Shown here: in pieces, positions 1 to 64,000 of the stretch
Layout: each line of letters begins with the position of its first letter
How positions within the stretch are numbered: the first letter of the stretch is position 1
Source of the DNA: Octopus bimaculoides
Taxonomy: Eukaryota
Assembly: GCF_001194135.2 (NCBI RefSeq)
Contig: NC_068996.1
Location: 13,108,852 to 13,172,851, forward strand
Direction of reading: 5' to 3'
Length of the DNA stretch: 64,000 nucleotides
Program-made: the position numbers and the translations under genes
Notes under the pieces: generated by a model
Told to the model about the DNA's origin: nothing
Databases searched by the model: none
What the model saw: only the letters and a program-made list of their open reading frames with translations

Positions 1-1250
1 GGGCTCGTTTGAAGGAGGGGAGGGGTCGGTTAGGGAAGATGTACGAAGTGGACGGTCGGACTGGAGTCGCCGAAAGGCTCGAAGAATGGTGCGTTGGAGA
101 GGTAGAGTGGTGAGGTGGTAGGTGAGGGGAAACGGGGGAGACGGTGGGGTGGATGCGAGTGGAGAGAGCAGATGCACGGTTCACGGAACGTGCTTCGGCA
201 AGGGCGGTGTGGATAGTGGTGAGGGGATATCCACGCAGGATGAAGTGGCGAGCCATGAGTTGAGACTGAGTCTCAAATCATGGTCGTCACTACAGAGCCT
301 GCGTAGACGGAGGAATTGGGAATAGGGGAAGGAAAGCTTGGTGTGTTTAGGGTGGGAGGAGGAGAAGTTGATGTATGAGTGTGAGTCTGTGTGTTTGTAG
401 TGGATGGAGTTGGTGAGAGTGGAATGATGAAAGCTGACCGAAATGTCAAGAAAGGAGACAGAGGTGTTAGAGATAGTGCAGGAGAAGTGGAGGGCAGGAT
501 GGAAAGATTTGACAAAAGAGAGGAAGGAGTCTATATGTTCGTGGGAGAGTGAGGTCGCACTGATACAGTCGTCAATATAACGGCCGTATAATTCGAGAAT
601 GGGGGGGGGGGTCAGGGAAACTTGAGAATATTTGGGCCTCAACGTAGCCAACGAACAGGTTGGTATAGTTGAAGCCCATTCTCGTTCCCATGGTCACTCC
701 CGAGAATGCTGGTAAAAAATCACCAGCGAACGAGAAGCAGTTGAGTGAGAGGACAAGTTCGGCAAAAGGAACGAGTGTGGATGTGTCGCGTTGGGGTTGG
801 GTCGAAGGTCAAGGAAATGCTGGAGTGCACGCACCTCCTCGCGGTGAGGGGTTACCGTAAGGCTCTGGATGTCGAGAGTGAAGAAAAGTTTAGAGGGGCC
901 AGGAGGAAAAGAGAAAGAGTTGAACAAACGAAGAGCGTGGTTGATGTCATGGATGTGAGAAGGGAGGGAAGCCACTAGGGGGGCAAGGAGATGAGGTCAT
1001 GGATAATGGAGGACACAGTCTGTTGGTAGCTGGGCGTGAGGTCAGAAGGCAGGAGAAGGAGGTATCTTAAAGTTGGCGGAGAGCTTCTGCCTTGTATAGG
1101 CCCGCGCGCCACACCACTATGGCTCCACCCTTGTCGGCCGCTTTTATGATGATGTCAGTGCGGCGTCGGAGACTTCGAAGATTTCAGCTGGTGAGATGTT
1201 CAGATGATGGAATGCATACTAGAGTGATATAATGTGGATTATGCGTTGTC
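1..1250 (-). mobile_element. Penelope-like retroelement (PLE), RT region, frameshifted; probably continues past the left window edge
   Basis: Minus-strand translation gives IIIKAADKGGAIVVW (~1115-1160), LPSHIHDINHAL..LFFTLDIQSL (694-975) and GRYIDDC (YIDD at 568-579). It also gives the PLE thumb motif FLDISV..IHYKHTDSHSYINFSSSHPKHTKLSFPYSQFLRLRRLCSDD. Motifs lie in different frames, so the copy is decayed. Confidence 0.92.
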
Positions 1251-2996: not shown

Positions 2997-3999
2997 TACG
3001 CTTCATTTAATTCGTTCTTAGTCTAAAGACATCTGTTGTTATGTCCTGTTATTGTTTTTATTGTATTCGTGTAACCTTGTGCGTTTTTTTCTGTCCTTGG
3101 CTTAGTATACATTCGCTGTTTTCTTCCTAGGAATCTAATGCTCTTAGCTTAGTTCTTCCTTGGGGCTGGCCAGTTTGGAACAATTTCGAGTATAATCAGC
3201 CGAAATTGCAAAGATAATCTGGAACTCGACTGAGGAAAGAAAACTCCGAATGACCTGTCCTTGTTTTCTTTGTATCGTCTTTCTGGATGTTTTGTCTCCC
3301 TTTCTTTTATCACCTAACTGTCTGGATGTTTTGCGTTCTTGTCTCACTTAGTATTATATATATNNNNNNNNNNNNNNNNNNNNNNNNNNNNNNNNNNNNN
3401 NNNNNNNNNNNNNNNNNNNNNNNNNNNNNNNNNNCATACATATACATACATATATTTGTATATACATGCATATATGGGCACAGGATACCACGGAACGTAA
3501 ACAACATAAAATACAAAAACATGAAATACGAAAACATGGAATACGAACTTTTTTACAAACAACGAAAGAAACAAACGGAAAACAAGACAAACAACACGAA
3601 AAAACGACCCTTCATTAGTTGTTGGCTGTTTTTCTACTTCGTATTTCGAGCATTTCACAAGATACGTTTTCGATATAACAGTTGCTTCCGCAAAGCAAAT
3701 TAAATAAAATTTGGGATTTTGCGGAGGGTCAAAGTTGGTAACAAAAACAAGACAGTGAGAACAGATAGGAAGAGTTGCTAATCATAGACGAGCTGAGTAG
3801 GTGAACGCGGAGAAAGAAGCTCTGACAGGAGAAAGACAGTGGATATATACACTATTGTGCACATACACACCTAGATATACACCCATATATAAGAGTAAAA
3901 TTTAAAGTTTTTTCATCACTAACATACTTTAAATGTTTTAGTTAGATTATTTACATTATTTACATTTGACGGATATTTGTCCTCATCTTGTTTGTTGTT

Positions 4000-4045
4000 A
4001 ACACAACGTTTCGACTGATATACCCTCCAGCCTTCATCAGGTGTC
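4000..4045 (-). ncRNA. Minimal type I hammerhead ribozyme motif, intact
   Basis: Minus strand reads GACAC CUGAUGA A GGCUG gaggguauau CAGUC GAAAC GUU GUGUU. Stem I is GACAC/GUGUU, stem II is GGCUG/CAGUC, stem III is reduced to the palindrome ACGU, and the NUH triplet is GUU. Confidence 0.75.
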
Positions 4046-4098
4046 TTGGGAAAATCTCGAACCTGGGTTCTCATTCCTAAGGTTCGAAATTTTCTCAA

Positions 4099-4144
4099 GA
4101 CACCTGATGAAGGCTGGAGGGTCTATTAGCAGAAACGTTGTGTT
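4099..4144 (+). ncRNA. Minimal type I hammerhead ribozyme motif, stem II base mismatched
   Basis: GACAC CUGAUGA A GGCUG gagggucuau UAGCA GAAAC GUU GUGUU. The core is intact, but G10.1 faces A instead of C. Confidence 0.65.
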
Positions 4145-7100
4145 AACAACAAGATGAGGACAAATATCCGTCAAATGTAAAAAATGTAAATAAAGTAAAC
4201 AATGTAAATAATGTACATAATTCCTCATCTCTTAAATATAGATCTGTATTAAAATGCTTTATTTTAATATCGATTCTGATTTCAACTTGAAATCATTACA
4301 AATATGTCATTCCCTTCAGTCGCATAGACCCTTGATATTTTGACGATTCCATTCTCTGCCGGATCCATAACATCCAAATTGTTACTGCTCTTCTGATTGT
4401 CTTTGATCTTTCCTGCTGCCAAATATTTTATTGAAACGAAAATTCCTTTACTTTTTCTCTACTCTCAAACTCTATTACTGTTCCGATGTTTCTGAAATAT
4501 TTCTCTCTTTCATTAAACCTAGAATCCCTATAAACCTTTTATTCATAAGCTCTCTAGCTTCCGGTACTCTTAAGCAGGTAATTTGAAGTAATCTCATATG
4601 CCACATGTGTCACACTCTCCCATAGAACAATTGCGCCATGATCAATCATTTGTTTTAAATCTCACACTAAATCACGGTATTAAATCACTCAAAAACTCCG
4701 AATGCGTGCTCGTTGCAAACATCATTTGGCCGTTTCATTTACCCTCTTTCGGTGTTTGGCATGCCCATCCGATACGAAATACAACCGCTACGAGATCCAC
4801 GAAATACAGCCAACAACACGTTATATTAATTAACTTACTCGACATAATTTCCTCTGTGTTTGAATGAACATATCACTTATCTTCCTAATGCTACATCCAT
4901 TGATAATATCTATTTATTTGAATTTGTTTCTAGGAATGCTTTTACTTTTATTTTAAACTTATTTCAGCAATTTTAAAAGTCATTGGTTTTAATAGTAGTT
5001 TGTACATTTCAAGTTCAGCCAACTTTCACTTTACCTTTCGTCGTCTTGAGGTCGATAAATAAGTACCAGTCAAGCTTTAGGTTCGACGTAATTTTCTGAC
5101 TTTGTGCTTAAAATAGAAACAGATATTATTCTGTACATGTGCAGGAATCAGGTATTATCAAAAACTTCAACAATGTTTTCTTACATGTAATTGTAGATCA
5201 ATGACGTTAATACAACCCAGACCTCAGGTATTGTAAAATTATGCTGGTAAACGTGTTGTAGTAGACCGTACTCAAGTTTTTCCCCTCTATTCTTTTTGCT
5301 GCTTCATTCAATTTGACTCAACAACTTTCACACTTTACTTAATTGACTGCCACCATCTTTTACCGCCAGTCGCTGTATTTTCACATGTCCCAATTAGGTC
5401 ATCAGCTCTGTTGGGATGTTGTTTGATTCCAGCAGAATAAACTCCACGCTAGGCATATATGTTTACTGCAAGACTTTGTGGTTGGAGGTGGTGGTGGGGG
5501 GGGGGTATTGCCAACAAATGTTGATTATATATTGTAGCTGATGCAACTGGCAGATCAACAACTTTTTGATGTCTTAACGATACAATGCATAGGACTTAAC
5601 AGAATATAACAGGATAATGCTACTGTTTGGTAACATTTTCCCTTTCATTGACAGTTTTATGCCACATTGTTTCCACAATCGATAACTGAGCACTCCAGAT
5701 TTAACTTGATACAAGATTTCATCGTTTATTATTATTTTTTTTTTGTATTCACCGCACTTACACAATATCCAAAATGGTGAGCAATTTTCTAGATACGTTC
5801 AAGGTAAATAACTAGTCAAAATAAGTTTATCAGCGAAGTGAACTTTGCCAATACTCATATTGTAACACGTCCTGAGGGATATGAGTCTAGGTAGCTTCAA
5901 AAGTCCACCATACATTTTTGTGAGAATATATACATTCCACTTCGTAGTTCACTGGCCGTCGTCCTTTACCTTGAAATAGGTACGAGTGTTCAGCCCTGTT
6001 TACTGCATAGATAACCGGAGAAGAGGCCGTGGTGTCTCCTCTCCTAGAGTATTTCGTGGTCTTCATGGCTAACCTCTAACCTCTCCTATTTATACTGGAG
6101 TTCCATTTCTTTTGAGCAAAGTGCATAAGACTTCCCTTTCTTTATTTTCGTATGCGTTCGTTAAGGTAATGCATACGATAAAAGGTAAGAATTATTTTTT
6201 CGAAATCTAGTGCCTGAATTTGTCGCAAGGTGAAAATCATATTGTTGGTGACCCACACTGGTTTTGAAGAAGAATTCGTTCGGATGTTGTTTGCAGTTGC
6301 TCGAGCGAGTTTTTGAACGAATTATATCTGTGATCGAGGGAAGTCAATTTCATCGGTACTTCCCACACCATTCTGTTCATCTTGATTCTAGAAATATCGA
6401 TATTGTAGCACATCATTTCGTATCAGCTATATTCGGCTCTTCCAGAATTAGTCACATCCAATGTTGTTCTAATTTCATAAGTTGAAAATGAATTTGTTAG
6501 TTTCCTTCTTGCATTATTTTGACAACAGAAATAGAGAAACCAGTAAGCATACTTTCTCATCGAGAGTGGACTTTTCTTTTATCTTTTCTTGTATCGGACG
6601 TCCCCGGCTTGCAGATGCGTTTACGCACACATACACGAACACGAATTTGTATATATGTATACAGGTATACATGTATGTGTGTGTATACACACACGCACAC
6701 ATGCACATCTGTGTGTGTTTTCCTCTGTTAATTCATTCCTCAAATTTGCTGATATGTGAAACCAAGGAGATAAGCCGGCAAGACTTAATATCTGCGTTCT
6801 GCACTCCTTTATGAATAGGGAATATAGCACCTTCTTATGAATATTTGTGGAATTTACCACTTGCAAGAAATGTTTGGATAAGTATCTCAAGCGGCTTTAC
6901 TAGGGGAATTATTAAGAACCCAGCAGGCTTTGTTGCAGAATTTGCGATAATTCAATTTATGGTTGAGATTATATCTTCCTTCTTATGTCAATATAATCGA
7001 TGGCTGCCGCTTAACTGTGCAGAGTGTTAGTGACCAGGAGCACATCTGGTTGACGTATTTGTACGTGTTTCATCGAGAGTATGAACACAGTTTTTTAATT

Positions 7101-13779: not shown

Positions 13780-15310
13780 GTTCCAGAGACTATAATCGAA
13801 ACCATAGCTGACCTTATTTCGTCTTGCGCCACCATCTTGAAATTGAATATAAGGTGTGATTGTATTACTATTGATAAAATTCAATGTCGCAGAGGTATAT
13901 TCCAAGGGGACAGCCTCCCTGATGCTGTTCATACTTTCAGTAAACCCCTTGTCATTTATGTTGTGCAAGTCTGAAGTTTATCTCATTGGTTCATAAGGTG
14001 AATGAAATACCAAATTTACTCATTGCTTCTTTGTGAATGATTTGAAACTATATGCCAAAGGCGGCGAGTTGGCAGAAACGTTAGCACGCCGGGCGAAATG
14101 CTTAGGGGTATTTCGTCTGCCGCTACGTTCTGAGTTCAAATTCCGCCGAGGTCGACTTTGCTTTCATCCTTTCGGATTAAATAAGTATCAGTAACGCACT
14201 GGGGTCGATATAATCGACTTAATCCGTTTGTCTGTCCTTGCTTGTCCCCTCTGTGTGTAGTCCCTTGTGGGCAGTAAAGAAATATGAAACTATATGCCAA
14301 TAACATGCATGAATTGAAAAAAAGCCTTGACCTGGGTACAACATTCTCAAAGGATATAAGATTGGAGTTTGGTCAGGATAAATGTTCCTATATGGTTGTG
14401 AACAGAGAGGAAACTGAAAATTAGAATAGCAGCATTCCCATCAATGGCTCGACTGTGACCTTGATATTTGATGAGGAGTGTTATATGTATTTATGAGTAG
14501 TTGAAGACATATCTTACGACGACAACTGTAACCAGCAACGCGTTACTAAATAATAGAAGAGCTAGATGGCAAAATATGAGCCTCGGGACTCTCTGTGTAC
14601 AATAAAGCAGTGGTCCACAATGTGTTTGCAGTACCAATACTCATACCAACATTTGAACTACTTGACGAAACCTGAGCCATTCATGAAAAATCCCCGAAAA
14701 TAGTAACCAACACAAATAATTTTCCCATCAAAAATGGCGTAGACCAACTCTGCCTAAACGAAAACATGGAGGAAGATGCTTAACAACGATCCAGACTGTT
14801 TTTGAATCTTTTGAATATTTCTTCGGCAGTATCCTTTAACCGTCAGGTGGCATAGGGCAACCCTTGACCAAGTCTGCATACACAATGCTGATAACTTTAT
14901 AAGACTTTATAAGTAGCTCTTCGAGCAACGTTCTTCGTCTGGTGACCTTGAATACATGTTCCAAAATTGCACGACTCTATTGTAACATATCATCACATGA
15001 AAAGAAGAGTGTATATCAGAAGAAAACCATGCATCGATATGTTAGCAGAAAGCCCCAGGATGGTAACATTCACCAAATTACCAACTTTCAAATTGTATGG
15101 TACTAATCCAGGTAGGGAAAAAAGCAACCCTGGTGCACAAAACGGACAGAGACGCAAAAAACACCAAAATATGATAACCGATACAGACTTTGTGAACTTA
15201 ACATCGAAGATATCACCGATATCATAACCAGCTGCCCAAAAATGTTATCACGTTATCCATCGATAACACATGATGTAGCCAAGAAACTATACAATGAGAT
15301 CTGTTAAAAC
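13780..15310 (+). mobile_element. R4/Dong-like (RLE-type) non-LTR retrotransposon fragment: RT to CCHC knuckle, decayed, SINE-interrupted
   Basis: RRGIFQGDSL..LFILSVNPLSFML (~13880-13970) and THCFFVNDLKLYA|NNMHELKKSLDL..FSKDIRLEFGQDKC, split by a SINE. Downstream are YNKAVVHNVFAVPILIPTF (~14595-14655) and YRLCELNIEDITDIITSCPKM..HDVAKKLYNEIC (~15180-15305). Confidence 0.88.
14059..14284 (+). mobile_element. tRNA-derived SINE, family A, full length with 16-bp TSD
   Basis: A-box-like ggcagaaacgttagc and B-box gagttcaaattcc. Identical TSD TGAAACTATATGCCAA at 14043-14058 and 14285-14300. Confidence 0.95.
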
Positions 15311-25345: not shown

Positions 25346-25394
25346 AGCTTCAAATTGTAGCTCAAGACTAGCAATTTCCGGTGTGTGCTCAACT

Positions 25395-25520
25395 GGTACT
25401 TATTCTATTGATCCCCGAATGGATGGACGGCATCGGTGGAACTTGAACCCAGAATGTGAAGACGGCCGAAATACTGCTAAGCATTTTGCCCAGCGTGCTA
25501 ACTATTCCGCCAGCTCGTCG
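25395..25520 (-). mobile_element. SINE family A head
   Basis: Reverse complement of ggcgagctggcggaatagttagcacgctgggcaaaatgcttagcagtatttcg..gggttcaagttcc. Confidence 0.85.
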
Positions 25521-26076
25521 TCTTTGATAATAATGATGACAATGATGATGATGATGATGCTGATCATGATGATGATGATGATAAGATAGAAATTTAGAAA
25601 AAAGAAGAAGAAAACAACAACAACAACAACAACAAGATGAAAATGCGAATCCTGCATATAATGAGATAAACACGAGGATAGAAAGCAAAAATTATATAAA
25701 TATAAATGAAAAATTTATGTTTGAATTTTTTAAAACATCTTTTTGGTTTTTCTGATTCCAAATAAGGAACGACATCGCAAATTAAAAGATAGATTTCTTT
25801 AAGTATACCTTTCAACTATTTATCTTTGTCTTGAATTTTTTTGGCTATATATTTCCATTTTATTTTTGTTTCTTTGTAATATTGTTTTCATTTTCAATTT
25901 AATCAGGTACATTTTTTCTTCTTTCTCTGCGAAACCAAATAGCTTTCATGTTAATGTTCGCATTACAAACAATCTTGAGTTTACTAAGTCAAGAAAACTA
26001 GTTTTGAAGAAACAAGTAGCTGCTGTTAAACTCATTCTTAATCATAACAATGTAAATTTTCTTTCCTTATTTATCA

Positions 26077-33122: not shown

Positions 33123-33330
33123 CGATGAACTGGCAGAATCTTTAGAGCCTCGGTATAAAAAGTGCTTTGCAGTGCATTTTCTGGCTGTTTACGTTCTGAG
33201 TTCAAATTCTGTAGGAGCCGACTTTGCTCTCATCCATTCGTGGTCGATGAAATATGTATCAGTTAAAACCATGGATTCATTTTAATCGATAAGTCTCAAA
33301 ATACCTGGCCTTGCACCTATACTCAAAAGA
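33123..33330 (+). mobile_element. SINE family A, diverged
   Basis: actggcagaatc..acgttctgagttcaaattctg..gccgactttgctctcatccattcg, homologous to the 14059 copy. Confidence 0.8.
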
Positions 33331-39529: not shown

Positions 39530-41400
39530 CCTGTATACATGAAATATCAAAGAGCAGTATTGCAGAGACAGGCTCTCAGAGACGAAAGGACTTGGTCTGG
39601 TCCACACGGTGTTTTTTAAAGTTTGGTTATTGTATACATAAACATTCGCATGTAAATTACTTTAACGTCAGAATGAAATATATCTGGTGGTTAAATAAAC
39701 AATACATAAAACTAAATTTAATTTTCAAATATTGGACACGTGTTAATTTGAAACACTACGGCTTTCATCAACTATTGATTCACCCAAATTCAGTGTTTTA
39801 AGTTCTTTTTATCTTTGTCATCTGCTTATAACTGGTGTGTAACCGATTTACAATGAAAGGTGCAACCTGCGTGCTAAGCCTAATTTTAGGTGCTTCGTTT
39901 TTCTATTAGTTTCCTGAAATTTAAGTTTGTAACCGTTTAGTAGCAGGAACATATCTTGAACAAGAATGTATTTAAAGTATAATAACCTGTATATTTTTGT
40001 TTGCACTTATTGTATAGTGTGTTGTATACCTTCGAATTTGCACTTAAGTTCCTTATTCCCTTGTCTTTTTTTAAATGTTAAACGTAATTTGACAATAACG
40101 TGGGGGATAGTTTTGCTCCTGTATCTGAATGATTAAGTCTGTTGTGAATATCAAACTTGGAATGAACTTTTGATAACCCATATGTCAGATGAATGCTTAG
40201 AAACGCATCTGCTGGAATGAATGTGGTTAATAATTGCGGAGGGGTGGTTAAAACCTTTATTGCTCATTCGTTTGGCTTACGATGTGAATAATGTTTAGTT
40301 GTCATCAGGTTTAGTGTTATGTCTATTTTAGTGTTATACTATTTTTAGTCCATTACTTCTCGTAACTTTTAGATTAAATGTTCTGATTATACTAAAACGT
40401 TTTCCTGACTTTGTCCATATCGCACCCGTTCTTATTATGAGATATAATACGTCCATCATGTCTATCAGGTTTCTTATTGAGGGCTTTGTTATTCTATGTC
40501 CGTTTTTGTTATTCTATGTCTGATAGTTTCGCGCCCACAGATACCTATAAAAAGCTTATTTCTTTGTTTCGTAACACTGAAAGCTTTATCACTAATTATA
40601 ACATCCATATATTCATTATTGTATAAAGACTAATTTGCGTTGTGGTGGCGTACATTTTACCGAATTAGAGATATTACAGAGTATCATCCATCTATTTCAG
40701 GACAAAATAAATGAGTGGTACTTCACACTATGGAACTAGATAAATCTACAGCTAGTCTATTTATTGCTAGTAGTAAACGATTTCATACTAGTGCTGCTAA
40801 AATTATATTGACTTAAGTTTGTTATTGAACTAACTTCTATATTTATGGAATTTAATATGTTTTTATTGACTAGACCCAGTTTGCTTTACACTGGATTAAT
40901 TAGATACGCATGGAATTCGCTATAAAATTACTCTATAATCCTTTATAGATAAATATATATAGCAGCAAGAAATGCACAGTTGATTTTATTTCTTAAATAC
41001 TATATTGACGTTATTGAGTTAAATATTGCAAAGAGAAATTTCTCTGCAATATGTTTGAACATTAATGGTTTATGAATTTTATTTTGTAGATTTAGTATTC
41101 AGAAGTCTTCTTCGTAGACGTTTAGTTAGGAAGAAGTATTTTTTGCTGCATGTACGGAGGCATTCAGGAGAATCTATTTTAGCTGTGTAGGTAAGCTATT
41201 CGGCTTGTCATTTATTAGGTTCTATATGTTTAGACTAGATTTTAAGCCTCATTGTATCTATTTCTTATCTTTTGGATGTTTGCTTCGTGAGGATTTCTGT
41301 TTGCTTCGTAACTTCAACTTATAATTAAGTTTTATTGACACAGCTTTTATTTTCTCATTCGCCTAGTGTAAACATTTTGTGGGGAATGTGATATTTTTCA
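39530..41400 (-). mobile_element. Old, highly decayed Penelope-like element
   Basis: Scattered minus-strand remnants include FTC..NV.YTIT...KK..V.QTK (GIY-YIG-like, ~39590-39670) and LK*MDDT (YxDD-like, ~40680-40700). Boundaries are uncertain. Confidence 0.4.
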
Positions 41401-47759: not shown

Positions 47760-47875
47760 TTTTATCGAAATAAAGGATGAAAGGCAACGTTGACCTCTGC
47801 AGGATTTGAACTCAGAACTTAAAGGGCTTGAAGAAATACTGCAAAGCATTTTGTCCAGCGCTTTAACGATTGTAA
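47760..47875 (-). mobile_element. SINE family A head
   Basis: tgaaaggcaacgttgacctctgcaggatttgaactcagaac..aaatactgcaaagcattttgtccagcg is the reverse complement of the family A head. Confidence 0.8.
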
Positions 47876-52299: not shown

Positions 52300-52530
52300 C
52301 AGTCGGGCGCTTGCCGTCGGAGACGAACTCAGGACGCAAAGATCTGCAGCAAATACGACAAAACATTTTGTCCAACGTTATAAAGATTCTACCATCCCAC
52401 CAGGCGACTGGTATTTTATTTTATCAGGCCAAGTGGAATGAAAGGCAACGATAACTTGGAGTGGAATTTGAACTCAGAATGCAAAGAGCCGGAATAAATA
52501 TCAGGAGGTATTTTGTTCGGTCCAAGCGAC
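52300..52530 (-). mobile_element. Two adjacent diverged SINE family A heads
   Basis: gaactcaggacgcaaag..aaatacgacaaaacattttgtccaacg and ggaatttgaactcagaatgcaaagagccggaataaata..gtattttgttcgg. Confidence 0.7.
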
Positions 52531-61380: not shown

Positions 61381-61961
61381 GTGTGCGTGTATGTATGTGT
61401 ATGTATGTGTATGTATGTGTATATCATATATNNNNNNNNNNNNNNNNNNNNNNNNNNNNNNNNNNNNNNNNNNNNNNNNNNNNNNNNNNNNNNNNNNNNN
61501 NNNNNNNNNNNNNNNNNNNNNNNNNNNNNNNNNNNNNNNNNNNNNNNNNNNNNNNNNNNNNNNNNNNNNNNNNNNNNNNNNNNNNNNNNNNNNNNNNNNN
61601 NNNNNNNNNNNNNNNNNNNNNNNNNNNNNNNNNNNNNNNNNNNNNNNNNNNNNNNNNNNNNNNNNNNNNNNNNNNNNNNNNNNNNNNNNNNNNNNNNNNN
61701 NNNNNNNNNNNNNNNNNNNNNNNNNNNNNNNNNNNNNNNNNNNNNNNNNNNNNNNNNNNNNNNNNNNNNNNNNNNNNNNNNNNNNNNNNNNNNNNNNNNN
61801 NNNNNNNNNNNNNNNNNNNNNNNNNNNNNNNNNNNNNNNNNNNNNNNNNNNNNNNNNNNNNNNNNNNNNNNNNNNNNNNNNNNNNNNNNNNNNNNNNNNN
61901 NNNNNNNNNNNNNNNNNNNNNNNNNNNNNNNNNNNNNNNNNNNNNNNNNNNNNNNNNNNNN

Positions 61962-61994
<33 letters not shown>

Positions 61995-62080
61995 AATTAA
62001 CTGCGTAAAAGACAATACGAAGAGTATTCCATCCAACGAGAGTTCAATATTACTAAATGTTTCAACTACATGTACTTGTC

Positions 62081-62125
62081 ACGCTACTAATAGTTTTCCC
62101 GAACATGCGTACGTTTATCAGGCAT
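62081..62125 (-). ncRNA. Type I hammerhead motif, degenerate (G8>A, extra A)
   Basis: AUGC CUGAUAA A CGUAC gcau GUUCG G GAAAAC UAUUA GUA GCGU. Stem I is AUGC/GCGU, stem III is ACU/AGU with loop AUU, and the triplet is GUA. Confidence 0.6.
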
Positions 62126-62288
62126 CAATCGCCTTTTGTAGTGTAGGTGGTCCTGAGTCGAAAAATATGGTTTTCCGACGCATACTTTGTACCAGTTCCT
62201 CAACTTTCTCTACCAGCCTTCTAAGATATAGCTGCTTAGATGGTATGGGTATATTTTTGGTGGAATAGTCGATATGATACAAGTCCAT
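62118..62288 (-). CDS. 56-aa open mini-ORF, PLE ORF N-terminus (below the ORF-track cut-off)
   Basis: MDLYHIDYSTKNIPIPSKQLYLRRLVEKVEELVQSMRRKTIFFDSGPPTLQKAIDA*. YSTKNIPIP..Y...L.EK.E....MR.K..FF is an N-terminal motif I recall from invertebrate PLE ORFs. Expression is unknown. Confidence 0.5.
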   Translation of the reverse strand: MDLYHIDYSTKNIPIPSKQLYLRRLVEKVEELVQSMRRKTIFFDSGPPTLQKAIDA

Positions 62289-62468
62289 ATTTGCGTGAAA
62301 CTTGATTGAGTCTTTTAAGAGTGTCTCCCTTATCCTGTATTCTTGCCAAAAATTAAATGAATATGCAGTGAACAGTAGTCACCAGGGCACGAATATAAGA
62401 AATTAACTGAGTAAAAGTCAATACGAAGTGTACTCCATCCAATGCGAGTTCAATATTACAAAACGTTT

Positions 62469-62682
62469 AAGGCGGTGAGGTGGCAGAAACGTTAGCCCGT
62501 CGGGTGAAATACTTAGCGGTATTTCGTCTGTCTTTACGTTCTGAGTTCAAATTCCACCGAGGTCGACTTTACCTTTTATCCTTTCGGAGTCGATAAATTA
62601 AGTATCAGTTGCGCACTGGGGTCGATCTAATCGACTGGTCCCCCTTCCCAAAATTTCTGGCCTTGTGTCTAGACTAGAAAAT
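62469..62682 (+). mobile_element. SINE family A with 17-bp TSD, inserted in the pseudo-LTR
   Basis: TSD aatattacaaaacgttt (62452-62468) / aatattagtaaacgttt (62683-62699). The uninterrupted repeat at 62046-62062 reads aatattactaaatgttt. Confidence 0.92.
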
Positions 62683-62716
62683 AATATTAGTAAACGTTTC
62701 AACTATATGTACTTAT

Positions 62717-62769
62717 CGCGCTGATGAACGTACGCATGTACGGGAAACTATTAATAGCTTAGTAGCGCG
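62717..62769 (+). ncRNA. Type I hammerhead motif in the inverted terminal copy
   Basis: CUGAUGA (62721-62727), A, CGUAC gcau GUACG, G, GAAAC (62744-62748), UAUUA, an 8-nt insert, GUA (62762-62764), GCGCG. The core is intact, but the stem I register is shifted so that C3 can pair. Confidence 0.6.
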
Positions 62770-64000
62770 ATAAGTACATGTAGTTGAAACGTTGAGTAAT
62801 ATATATATATATATATATTCATACATACAGCCACAGCATGAACTAATAATCAGAATTCCTGTGCGTGCTCGCAAGCGTAGGTGTGGTTGTGGTAAAAGGC
62901 TTAGAGACCCAACTTCATGTAAGTCTGCTCACACAAATATGACCTATACTGAATCAGGGCAAGTTTGGAATTGTTTCTTGATCCCATTGGTCCACCAGTA
63001 TGCGACTCAAATTGGAATCACCCTGTTACACTTTTAGTGCTTACGAGTAGACGTATGGAAGGCAAAAGGAACTGAGAATTATATTTGACTTATTCAGAAT
63101 TTGGATAACGAACATTGTTATGAAACAATCCCTTTAATTTTTATACATGTTTAAGCAGTGATACATTTTTCAGAGGGTACCATCCCTCTGAGTAGAAACT
63201 TTTTTAATGATAAAATTGCTTTTTCCACCAGACAAAATAAATAGAATATGAAGAGATAACAAATTTCCTCATTTTGAATCTACTCTTCAAGAAGAAAAAT
63301 ATTTTCTTTTATAACACGAATCAACTTAATATTTCTTTCAAGCGGTTTTAACAGTCAAAGTAGAATTCGGGAGCAGTAAAATTTATATTTATGCCCATTG
63401 AAATGCGTTATAAATGTTGCATATATTATTAGGATAGAAAGGTGAGAAAACTACATTAGAAGTGAGGAGAAGCCATATAATGGAAGGTGGGGAGGGAGTG
63501 GTGGAAGAAAACCAGAATGGAGAAAACATTTGGATTTTGATAAAAAGGATAGGAACGATCCAATGAAGTTTTGACTCGACATAACTCACCATGCAATTAC
63601 AAATAAAATTAACAGTTATTAACTGTAATAAATTTTGCTTTATAGTGTTACTTTATATAAGTGATGGTATAACAGGAAGATGAAAGTGTTCAGGTGATTT
63701 TGTAGCTCTGGGTTCTTTTGAGAATAAATGCCGTTTTTAATGTTATGTAGCCCATTATAGTCAGTGTAACTAATTATTTTATTTTATACTACAATGCACC
63801 CTCAAACGTTTGTATTGTACGTTATTACTATTCACATTTCATGAGTGCCGATTCAGTGATAACAGTCAAGGTATTTCGATGTGATACAATGAACTGTGTT
63901 TGACACGGTTGAGGAAACCTGTTTAAATGGTGGTAGGTTGGCGACTACCAAAATACTTGCGCTTTGGCGTCCAGGACAAACGGAGATGAATATTGTTATT

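What the first reader, a model, noticed from the sequence alone, without database searches (positions are those of the whole stretch)
61991..62802. Retrozyme-like mini-Penelope with a ~406-nt monomer between two predicted hammerhead cleavage sites
Seen: two diverged direct copies of a pseudo-LTR on the minus strand. The downstream copy contains a hammerhead motif with a GUA|GCGU cleavage site (62085/62084). The upstream copy starts at the equivalent post-cleavage base (62721). That span is 637 nt; removing the 214-bp SINE and one 17-bp TSD leaves 406 nt. No RT or endonuclease is present. Established: PLE pseudo-LTRs carry minimal hammerheads, and animal non-LTR retrozymes are short tandem hammerhead units that give self-cleaved, circularisable RNAs. 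Inference: this is a non-autonomous, ribozyme-processed retroelement derived by internal deletion of a PLE. I know of no description of such an element in octopus, though I cannot search for one.
Basis: partly seen in the sequence, partly recalled or inferred. Interest (0 to 1): 0.85.

Follow-up and report, generated by a model that had tools for sequence, protein, structure and literature searches.

The report
Decayed, internally deleted Penelope-like retrotransposon
This is one old, broken copy of a known kind of jumping gene (a Hydra-type Penelope-like element) that has lost almost all of its protein gene but kept its small self-cutting RNA motif; it is a tidy example of a known type, not a new class of element.

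Summary
The coordinates and arithmetic of the finding hold: direct repeats spaced 406 and 637 nt, a 214-bp SINE and a 17-bp TSD. Two things were missed.

- An 82-nt inverted fragment (62721-62802, + strand) carries the only intact hammerhead core.
- A 56-codon ORF stub (62288-62118, - strand) is homologous to the N-terminus of Hydra-clade PLE proteins (best E 6.5e-8).

The sense hammerhead is degenerate: CUGAUAA, a U.U mismatch in helix II, and GAAAA. Rfam finds no hammerhead. A covariance model built only from 25 relatives' hammerheads ranks the two local copies 1st and 4th in the window.

The locus is a single insertion into a (TA)n microsatellite, 585 nt without the SINE. Its layout is the published PLE one: inverted 5'-truncated fragment, partial tandem (pseudo-LTR), then body. 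The PLE origin and the internal deletion are therefore well supported.

The upstream repeat begins at the predicted cleavage base. That suggests, from this one case, a ribozyme-cut RNA template.

It is not a retrozyme here. It has one sense ribozyme and no tandem array, and the upstream "site" has no sense ribozyme. Whether a family shares the deletion could not be tested. Interest is low to moderate.

The parts
62799..62818 (.). (TA)n microsatellite flank on the 5' side of the element (element read on the minus strand). The last ATAT overlaps the element end.
   Evidence: Sequence read.
62721..62802 (+). Inverted, 5'-truncated fragment, sense on the + strand. It holds the hammerhead core CUGAUGA-A-CGUAC-GCAU-GUACG-G-GAAA-CUAUUAAUAGCUUAG-UA, then 38 nt of post-cleavage sequence. 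It starts at C3/U4 of the first box. It is the only intact core at the locus.
   Evidence: Inverted repeats I4 and I6. 83% identical to the sense copy. Lineage covariance model: 23.4 bits, E 4e-4 at 62716-62770, the top hit in the window. Hairpin of -57.5 kcal/mol, z -9.3.
62683..62721 (-). Upstream direct pseudo-LTR, first part. It begins at the base equivalent to G1.1, the first base after the predicted cleavage site. The start is ambiguous from A17 to C1.2 because of a 2-nt CT/AG overlap with the inverted fragment.
   Evidence: Direct repeat D3; alignment.
62469..62682 (+). Secondary insertion of a 214-bp SINE.
   Evidence: 72-86% identical to other copies in the window, e.g. 14058-14219. 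ARAGORN calls no tRNA in it.
62683..62699 (-). SINE target-site duplication, copy 1 (AAACGTTTACTAATATT).
62452..62468 (-). SINE target-site duplication, copy 2 (AAACGTTTTGTAATATT; 15/17 identical to copy 1).
62393..62451 (-). Upstream direct pseudo-LTR, second part, ending ...TTTCTTATAT.
   Evidence: Direct repeat D2; alignment.
62289..62392 (-). 5' UTR of the element body (104 nt). The body starts where the downstream pseudo-LTR copy instead runs into (TA)n.
   Evidence: The same situation is seen in relative L069.
62118..62288 (-). ORF stub of 56 codons plus stop. Codons 1-46 (MDLYHIDYSTKNIPIPSKQLYLRRLVEKVEELVQSMRRKTIFF) are homologous to the N-terminus of Hydra-type PLE proteins. The TGA stop lies inside the CUGAUAA box. 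The deletion junction lies between about 62153 and 62127.
   Evidence: HMMER: 124 hits, best E 6.5e-8. Hit sequences. tblastn E 1e-9 to 7e-12.
62079..62127 (-). Sense hammerhead, now degenerate: UGAUGC-CUGAUAA-A-CGUAC-GCAU-GUUCG-G-GAAAA-CUAUUAG-UA|GCGUGA. The predicted cleavage is between 62085 and 62084.
   Evidence: Lineage covariance model: 13.0 bits, E 0.44, 4th hit in the window. Helix III CUAUUAG-UA|GC is identical to relatives L068 and L081. No stable monomer fold (z +0.7).
61987..62084 (-). Downstream pseudo-LTR: 98 nt after the cleavage site, ending ...TTTCTCATAT. This is the 3' end of the insertion.
   Evidence: 86/98 identical to the upstream copy.
61962..61990 (.). (TA)n flank on the 3' side, followed at once by an assembly gap (61432-61961). 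More (TA)n and (TG)n lies beyond the gap.

Best explanation
The interval 61987-62802 (minus strand) is one old insertion of an internally deleted Hydra-clade Penelope-like element into a (TA)n microsatellite. It is 585 nt once the later SINE is removed.

The order of parts is:
1. An 82-nt inverted, 5'-truncated fragment.
2. A 98-nt upstream pseudo-LTR.
3. A 104-nt 5' UTR.
4. The first ~46-56 codons of the PLE ORF.
5. The deletion junction.
6. The hammerhead.
7. The 98-nt downstream pseudo-LTR.

Full-length relatives have about 2.4 kb between successive hammerheads. Here about 2 kb, holding all of RT and EN, is missing, which leaves a 406-nt repeat unit.

The ribozyme is the dimer-type minimal type-I hammerhead of this PLE lineage. 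It has a non-Watson-Crick pair flanking helix II, and helix III is a 7-nt quasi-palindrome.

Inferred mechanism: a longer-than-unit RNA was cut by its 5' hammerhead but not by its 3' one. It was reverse-transcribed from a (TA)n nick primed on the ...AUAU 3' end. A second priming or template-switch event produced the inverted fragment.

The copy has since decayed. The pseudo-LTRs differ by about 12%, the sense ribozyme has lost G8, and a SINE has inserted. As it stands, the locus cannot release a monomer or a circle.

Whether the deletion arose in a master copy, during reverse transcription, or in place is not known. Without evidence of other copies I treat it as a single defective copy.
For: ORF homology:
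- The ORF stub matches PLE N-termini.
[quoted passage not shown] These are the traits PMC8557442 lists for the Hydra clade.

Hammerheads in relatives:
- In 82 relatives' loci my descriptor finds 65 hammerheads against about 0.45 expected from shuffles, all but one on the ORF strand.
- The cleavage site lies 136-216 nt upstream of the ORF start in all but one of 34 cases (one outlier at 358), and again about 2.2-2.6 kb downstream. Here the upstream distance is 219 nt.
- Covariation in 25 of these hammerheads supports helices I, II and III: 84.6% of cells paired against 61.7% shuffled, 15 of 17 pairs with double changes, and every register shift falls to 47% or less.
- The model built from them, with no local sequence, ranks the two local copies 1st and 4th in the window.
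- With relatives as outgroups, each local copy keeps what the other lost. The inverted copy keeps G8, the helix II pair and GAAA. The sense copy keeps the 7-nt helix III. So the core was intact at insertion.

Insertion layout:
- Both flanks are (TA)n.
- Relatives L069, L005 and L001 also abut (TA)n, and the L069 3' end lies about 100 nt after its cleavage site.
- The layout matches the published PLE pattern of an inverted 5'-truncated copy next to a partial tandem.
Against: - Rfam's hammerhead models do not hit either copy.
- Pfam recognises neither the stub nor P0079. The Hydra assignment therefore rests on motifs read by eye and on the paper's description.
- The sense copy scores only E 0.44 with the lineage model.
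- Thermodynamic folding does not recover the hammerhead fold.
- The link between the 5' end and the cleavage site is a single coincidence, naively about 3 in 406. In another family of the lineage, upstream pseudo-LTRs begin about 10 nt upstream of the ribozyme, not at the cut.
- The assembly gap 25 nt past the 3' end prevents proof that nothing of the element continues beyond it.
- Copy number in the host genome is unknown.
Confidence: 0.72

Rival explanations
1. The locus is one copy of an amplified, non-autonomous 'mini-PLE' family with a 406-nt unit, comparable to animal non-LTR retrozymes. The family would be mobilised in trans by Hydra-type PLEs through hammerhead-processed, possibly circular, RNA.
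For: - The unit size is in the range of mussel retrozymes, 350-390 bp.
- The deletion removes about 2 kb yet keeps the ribozyme with its helix I strand, the pseudo-LTR and the 5' end.
- The upstream repeat starts at the predicted cleavage base.
- Retrozymes have been proposed to be PLE derivatives.
Against: - The other 63 kb of the window holds no second copy; only the SINE matches elsewhere.
- No close relative of the stub was found: at most 64% identity among the 120 hits listed of 241, and none in 80 metagenome loci. These collections probably lack the host genome, so this is weak evidence.
- There is one sense ribozyme and only about 1.24 units, not a tandem array.
- Among 23 downstream hammerheads in relatives' loci, only those of L001 mark an internally deleted copy.
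Confidence: 0.18
2. The locus is the edge of a longer tandem (satellite-like) array of 406-nt units, cut off by the assembly gap at 61432-61961.
For: - The gap starts 25 nt after the last repeat.
- PLE structures are known to break short-read assemblies.
Against: - The downstream copy leaves the unit sequence exactly where the upstream copy continues into the 5' UTR, and it runs into (TA)n instead.
- (TA)n and (TG)n also lie on the far side of the gap.
- Relative L069 ends the same way.
Confidence: 0.05
3. The hammerhead resemblance is chance. The structure is just a palindrome plus a duplication of unrelated origin, for example a foldback, MITE or Helitron.
For: - There is no Rfam hit.
- Rfam gives sub-threshold miRNA-like hairpin hits only.
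Against: - The lineage model ranks the two copies 1st and 4th in the window.
- Helix III and the cleavage triplet are identical to relatives L068 and L081.
- The adjacent ORF stub is homologous to PLE proteins.
- By reading the sequence, there are no terminal inverted repeats and no Helitron ends.
Confidence: 0.02

Closest known systems
Hydra clade of C-terminal-EN Penelope-like elements (Craig, Yushenova, Rodriguez, Arkhipova 2021, PMC8557442)
   Same: - The N-terminal region carries the RWK motif (RRK in this copy).
- The insertion is in (TA)n.
- A hammerhead sits in the pseudo-LTR.
- Relatives are short, about 2.4 kb between hammerheads.
- The layout is a partial tandem plus an inverted 5'-truncated fragment.
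- The clade is reported from molluscs among other aquatic invertebrates.
   Different: - About 2 kb is deleted, including all of RT, the linker and the GIY-YIG EN. Only ~46-56 codons remain.
- The copy is old and decayed and carries a SINE.
Minimal type-I hammerheads of PLEs (Cervera and de la Pena 2014, PMC4209133)
   Same: - It is type I with a short helix I and lies in the pseudo-LTR.
- There is an extra nucleotide after A9.
- Helix III is a palindrome that cannot fold alone, which implies action as a dimer.
   Different: - The pair flanking helix II is non-Watson-Crick (A.G here; non-standard in 20 of 25 relatives, mostly U.U) instead of the conserved G10.1-C11.1.
- The sense copy has lost G8.
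- The inverted copy has an 8-nt insertion in helix III.
Animal non-LTR retrozymes (Cervera and de la Pena 2020, PMC7229834; Li, Clavereau, Pollet 2026, bioRxiv 10.64898/2026.07.22.740005)
   Same: - The unit is 406 nt, AT-rich, with a hammerhead and without RT.
- It plausibly depends on PLE enzymes.
- It derives from PLE terminal sequence.
   Different: - It is not a tandem array. There is a single sense ribozyme and about 1.24 units.
- It keeps a piece of the PLE ORF.
- The ribozyme is the minimal PLE type rather than the canonical loop-loop type.
- There is no evidence for multiple copies or circular RNA.
5' inversions by twin priming in LINE-1 insertions (from my own knowledge, not tested here)
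   Same: An inverted 5' piece is joined to a direct 3' piece at a short microhomology (2 nt here).
   Different: - The inverted piece here duplicates sequence that is also present in direct orientation.
- The PLE mechanism is unknown.

Membership tests
Penelope-like element, Hydra clade | [quoted passage not shown] | tested here: not met
   No RT or EN coding sequence at the locus (tblastn with P0079 and others). Only the ORF start remains. The locus is therefore a derivative, not an autonomous member.
Penelope-like element, Hydra clade | N-terminal region with the RWK motif (PMC8557442) | tested here: met
   Codons 1-46 match the PLE N-termini consensus M..YS.KNIPIPS...Y..LIEKVE..IKRMRWKA.FF. 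HMMER best E 6.5e-8 with 124 hits. This copy has RRK in place of RWK.
Penelope-like element, Hydra clade | DKT in place of DKG, and a CxCX5C linker before the EN | tested here: inconclusive
   Seen by eye in the full-length relative P0079 (SDKTRNLY; CNCMDPSNC). These regions are deleted in this locus. Pfam does not recognise P0079.
Penelope-like element, Hydra clade | Insertion into (TA)n | tested here: met
   (TA)n lies on both flanks. The same is seen in relatives L001, L005 and L069.
Penelope-like element, Hydra clade | Pseudo-LTRs formed by a partial tandem, often with an adjacent inverted 5'-truncated copy | tested here: met
   98-nt direct repeats, 86/98 identical, plus the 82-nt inverted fragment. 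The pattern is described in PMC8557442.
Hammerhead ribozyme (type I, PLE minimal form) | Conserved core: CUGANGA, GAAA and a UH cleavage site | tested here: inconclusive
   The inverted copy is intact (CUGAUGA, GAAA, GUA). The sense copy has CUGAUAA and GAAAA.
Hammerhead ribozyme (type I, PLE minimal form) | Helices I, II and III supported by covariation | tested here: met
   In 25 relatives, 15 of 17 pairs show double changes, and 84.6% of cells pair against at most 47% when the register is slid. The local copies fit this structure. Caveat: my descriptor required the inner 3 bp of helices I and II. Helix III was not required.
Hammerhead ribozyme (type I, PLE minimal form) | Match to the curated Rfam hammerhead models | tested here: not met
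   No hit at gathering score in the window or at E<=10 in 61950-63000.
Hammerhead ribozyme (type I, PLE minimal form) | Self-cleavage | not testable with these tools
   This needs in vitro transcription of a dimer. The only indirect hint is that the upstream repeat starts at the predicted cut.
Animal non-LTR retrozyme | Tandem direct repeats (dimer or longer), each with a sense hammerhead | tested here: not met
   There is one sense hammerhead (62079-62127) and about 1.24 units. The upstream repeat lacks a sense core.
Animal non-LTR retrozyme | Monomer of about 150-450 bp without coding capacity | tested here: inconclusive
   The 406-nt unit fits the size range. It still carries a 56-codon PLE ORF stub.
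Animal non-LTR retrozyme | Multi-copy family expressed as circular RNA | not testable with these tools
   No access to the host genome or transcriptome. Window ORFs are not on record in the collections.

The most novel reading that the evidence does not exclude
The locus represents an amplified family of 406-nt mini-PLEs in a mollusc, and it still carries the start of the PLE ORF. That would make it a direct intermediate between an autonomous Hydra-type PLE and a retrozyme-like element in invertebrates. Its 5' end at the hammerhead cut would show that minimal PLE hammerheads cleave in vivo and that cut RNAs serve as templates for insertion.
Probability: 0.15. Interest if true: 0.55.

Novelty: new member of a known kind. 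Interest (0 to 1): 0.3.

Why it matters
As a single locus it matters little. It is a decayed copy of a described PLE clade with a described class of ribozyme.

Two details are worth a genome-wide follow-up.

1. A deletion derivative that keeps the pseudo-LTR, the hammerhead and the ORF start is the kind of intermediate expected if animal retrozymes arise from PLEs. The 2026 preprint proposing that idea says it did not examine invertebrates.
2. The upstream repeat starts at the predicted cleavage base. If this recurs across copies, it would be in vivo evidence for the processing role long proposed for PLE hammerheads, whose in vitro activity is low.

Separately, the lineage hammerheads collected here mostly have a non-Watson-Crick pair where G10.1-C11.1 is regarded as conserved.

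Tried and rejected
- Rfam at gathering score and at E<=10: no hammerhead, only sub-threshold miRNA-like hairpin matches to the 39-bp-arm palindrome.
- Word-indexed protein search with the 86-codon frame: nothing. The exhaustive HMMER search was what revealed the homology.
- Pfam on the stub, on the 181-651 ORF and on P0079: nothing useful.
- My own strict hammerhead descriptor: fails on both local copies. In the + strand copy, helix I is one base out of register. The sense copy has G8A and a broken helix II.
- Minimum-free-energy folding and cofolding: do not recover the hammerhead fold, even for relatives. I therefore gave these no weight.
- blastn of the SINE-free element against the window and against 82 relatives' loci: matches only the SINE and the ORF stub, so no family member was found.
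- Exact look-ups of three window ORFs in the assembly collection: none on record.
- Helitron, TIR/MITE and foldback readings: rejected from the termini. There are no terminal inverted repeats and no TC...CTRR ends.
- Test of whether 5' ends at the cleavage site are general in the lineage: they are not. In the L014 family, upstream pseudo-LTRs start about 10 nt before the ribozyme. The other hammerhead pair in this window joins about 45 nt upstream of the ribozyme. The one inverted pair in relatives (L038) is tail-to-tail.
- Lunse, Weinberg and Breaker 2017 (PMC5785218): not held.
Full report
**Observation**

I read the element on the minus strand from 62802 down to 61987.
- 61987-62062 and 62393-62468 are 88% identical, 406 nt apart.
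- 62046-62085 and 62683-62722 are 88% identical, 637 nt apart.

The 231-nt difference has two parts. One is a 214-bp SINE at 62469-62682, which has diverged copies elsewhere in the window. The other is one copy of a 17-bp target-site duplication, 15/17 identical between copies. With these removed, the two direct copies align over 98 nt without indels, 86/98 identical. GUA|GCGU lies at 62085|62084, and the upstream copy begins at the equivalent G, 62721.

Both outer ends run into (TA)n, at 62799-62818 and 61962-61990. Each end shares a 4-nt ATAT overlap with the microsatellite. A 530-N assembly gap follows the 3' flank, with more (TA)n and (TG)n beyond it.

First, the stretch 62721-62802 is an inverted copy. 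On the + strand it reads CUGAUGA-A-CGUAC-GCAU-GUACG-G-GAAA-CUAUUAAUAGCUUAG-UA, followed by 38 nt of the post-cleavage segment. It is 83% identical to the sense copy. With the upstream direct copy it forms a hairpin with 39-bp arms (-57.5 kcal/mol, z -9.3).

This inverted copy has the only intact core. The sense copy (62127-62079) reads CUGAUAA, has a U.U mismatch in helix II, and has GAAAA. It does not fold stably as a monomer. The upstream 'cleavage site' at 62722/62721 is preceded by the antisense of a ribozyme. The locus as it stands therefore cannot release a 406-nt monomer.

Second, the internal region contains an 86-codon open frame (62378-62121). The word-indexed search found nothing for it. 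The exhaustive HMMER search of 1.84 billion representatives gave 124 hits at E<=1e-3, best 6.5e-8. In these hits, frame residues 31-76 align to residues 1-46 of many proteins that start M..YS.KNIPIPS...Y..LIEKVE..IKRMRWKA.FF.

One hit, P0079 (713 aa), is full length. [quoted passage not shown] So the ATG at 62288 is the start of a PLE ORF, of which ~46-56 codons remain. Its stop codon lies inside the CUGAUAA box.

**Which PLE**

Craig et al. 2021 (PMC8557442) describe the Hydra clade with these traits:
- short elements (<3 kb);
- an N-terminal RWK motif;
- DKT in place of DKG;
- a CxCX5C linker;
- readily detected hammerheads;
- insertion into (TA)n in almost all families;
- presence in Cnidaria, Mollusca, Echinodermata and Arthropoda.

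The relatives found here fit this description, and so does the remaining part of this locus. Pfam does not recognise these proteins. The clade assignment therefore rests on motifs read by eye and on the paper's description.

**Is the hammerhead real?**

Rfam finds none. I fetched 82 loci that encode the N-terminal motif.

A simple descriptor found 65 hammerheads in 266 kb, against about 0.45 in shuffles. All but one are on the ORF strand. In all but one of 34 cases their cleavage sites lie 136-216 nt upstream of the ORF start (one outlier at 358). They recur about 2.2-2.6 kb downstream, which gives a unit of about 2.4 kb. In this locus the cleavage-to-ATG distance is 219 nt.

The lineage architecture is:
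- helix I of 4-6 bp;
- CUGAWGA;
- one nucleotide;
- helix II;
- one nucleotide;
- GAAA;
- a 7-nt quasi-palindrome C-N-N-N-N-N-G;
- UH.

L068 and L081 have exactly CUAUUAG-U(C/A)|GC, the same helix III as the sense copy here.

In 25 of these sequences, all three helices covary. 84.6% of cells pair against 61.7% in shuffles. 15 of 17 pairs show double changes. Sliding the register drops pairing to 29-47%. The two nucleotides that flank helix II do not form a standard pair in 20 of 25 sequences.

I built a covariance model from these 25 sequences, with none from the window, and searched the whole window with filters off. The results were:
- 62716-62770 (+) is the top hit (23.4 bits, E 4e-4).
- 62127-62079 (-) is 4th (13.0 bits, E 0.44).
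- The 2nd and 3rd hits are an unrelated inverted pair of canonical PLE minimal hammerheads near 4000-4145.

With the relatives as outgroups, each local copy keeps what the other has lost. The ribozyme was therefore intact when the element inserted.

**Structure and likely mechanism**

The order of parts is: inverted 5'-truncated fragment, upstream pseudo-LTR, 5' UTR, ORF stub, deletion junction (between about 62153 and 62127), hammerhead, downstream pseudo-LTR. This is the published PLE insertion pattern.

The 3' end lies 98 nt after the cut and merges into (TA)n. Relative L069 ends the same way.

The upstream direct copy begins at G1.1. A 2-nt CT/AG overlap makes the start ambiguous from A17 to C1.2. 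The inverted fragment begins at C3/U4.

My preferred reading, which is inference, is this. The template was a longer-than-unit RNA cut at its 5' hammerhead and uncut at its 3' one. It was primed from a (TA)n nick. A second priming or template switch gave the inverted piece.

The naive chance of a 5' end within that 3-nt window is about 3/406, but this is one case judged after the fact. Other families of the lineage do not show it:
- In the L014 family, upstream pseudo-LTRs start about 10 nt before the ribozyme.
- The other hammerhead pair in this window joins about 45 nt upstream of the ribozyme.

The roughly 12% divergence between the pseudo-LTRs and the 2 differences in the 17-nt SINE TSD show that the insertion is old.

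**Comparison and novelty**

The PLE origin and the internal deletion are well supported. The retrozyme label is not. Retrozymes are tandem arrays of sense hammerhead units that yield circular RNA (PMC7229834). Here there is one sense ribozyme, about 1.24 units, and a coding remnant.

The idea that retrozymes are non-autonomous PLE derivatives is already in the literature for vertebrates (bioRxiv 10.64898/2026.07.22.740005). That preprint states that invertebrates were not examined.

Internally deleted copies exist among the relatives (L001) but are a minority.

Whether this deletion defines a family could not be tested. The window has no second copy. The searchable collections hold no close relative, and they evidently lack the host genome. 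The host identity ('octopus') also could not be checked.

**Verdict**

This is a new member of a known kind: a decayed, internally deleted Hydra-type PLE. Interest is about 0.3. A genome-wide check of the junction and of 5' ends is the step that could raise it.

Noticed in passing
window 3999-4046 (-) and 4098-4145 (+), palindrome about 3960-4200: An inverted pair of canonical PLE minimal hammerheads (GACAC CUGAUGA A GGCUGG...UCAGUC GAAA CG UU|GUGUU). They belong to a different PLE family, with no nucleotide similarity to the finding. The two copies join about 45 nt upstream of the ribozyme, not at the cleavage site. Rfam does not report them either.
   Followed up: partly
window 181-651 (-): A 156-aa ORF that looks by eye like a PLE RT and thumb fragment (RYIDDC; HTDSHSYINFSSSHP). 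Pfam is silent, and the ORF does not match the Hydra-type protein P0079 by tblastn.
   Followed up: partly
window 40706-40927 (-): A tblastn match (E 1e-5) to residues 187-260 of the Hydra-type PLE protein P0079. This is a second, separate fragment of this PLE lineage in the window.
   Followed up: no
relatives' loci L001-L082 (alignment A3): In 20 of 25 lineage hammerheads, the pair flanking helix II (positions 10.1/11.1) is non-Watson-Crick, mostly U.U. Cervera and de la Pena 2014 describe G10.1-C11.1 as highly conserved in PLE hammerheads. Helix III is a 7-nt quasi-palindrome, which implies obligate dimers.
   Followed up: partly
window 62745-62754 (+), inside the inverted fragment: The inverted copy has an 8-nt insertion in helix III. 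It creates a perfect 10-nt palindrome (CTATTAATAG) and a helix III that can fold within one molecule. The origin of the insertion is unknown.
   Followed up: no
window 62684-62802: The inverted fragment and the upstream pseudo-LTR form a 119-nt hairpin with 39-bp arms on either strand (-57.5 and -51.4 kcal/mol). It gives sub-threshold miRNA-precursor matches in Rfam (mir-1277, 37 bits against an 81-bit cut-off). It could be a source of small RNAs if transcribed.
   Followed up: no
window 14058-14219, 25385-25524, 33123-33264, 47772-47851, 52461-52487: Further diverged copies or fragments (72-93% identity) of the SINE that interrupts the element. ARAGORN calls no tRNA in the 62469-62682 copy.
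   Followed up: no
whole window: There are 14 runs of N (5203 bases in total). Those I read or saw in ORF translations abut microsatellites such as (TA)n, (TG)n and (TC)n. The gap next to the finding is of this kind.
   Followed up: no
L001 6001-7550 (ENA ERZ25072740 contig): Another internally deleted Hydra-type PLE (RT core missing, EN kept). Right after its hammerhead comes a 5'-truncated copy of a second family with its own hammerhead. Its 5' end also abuts (TA)n.
   Followed up: partly
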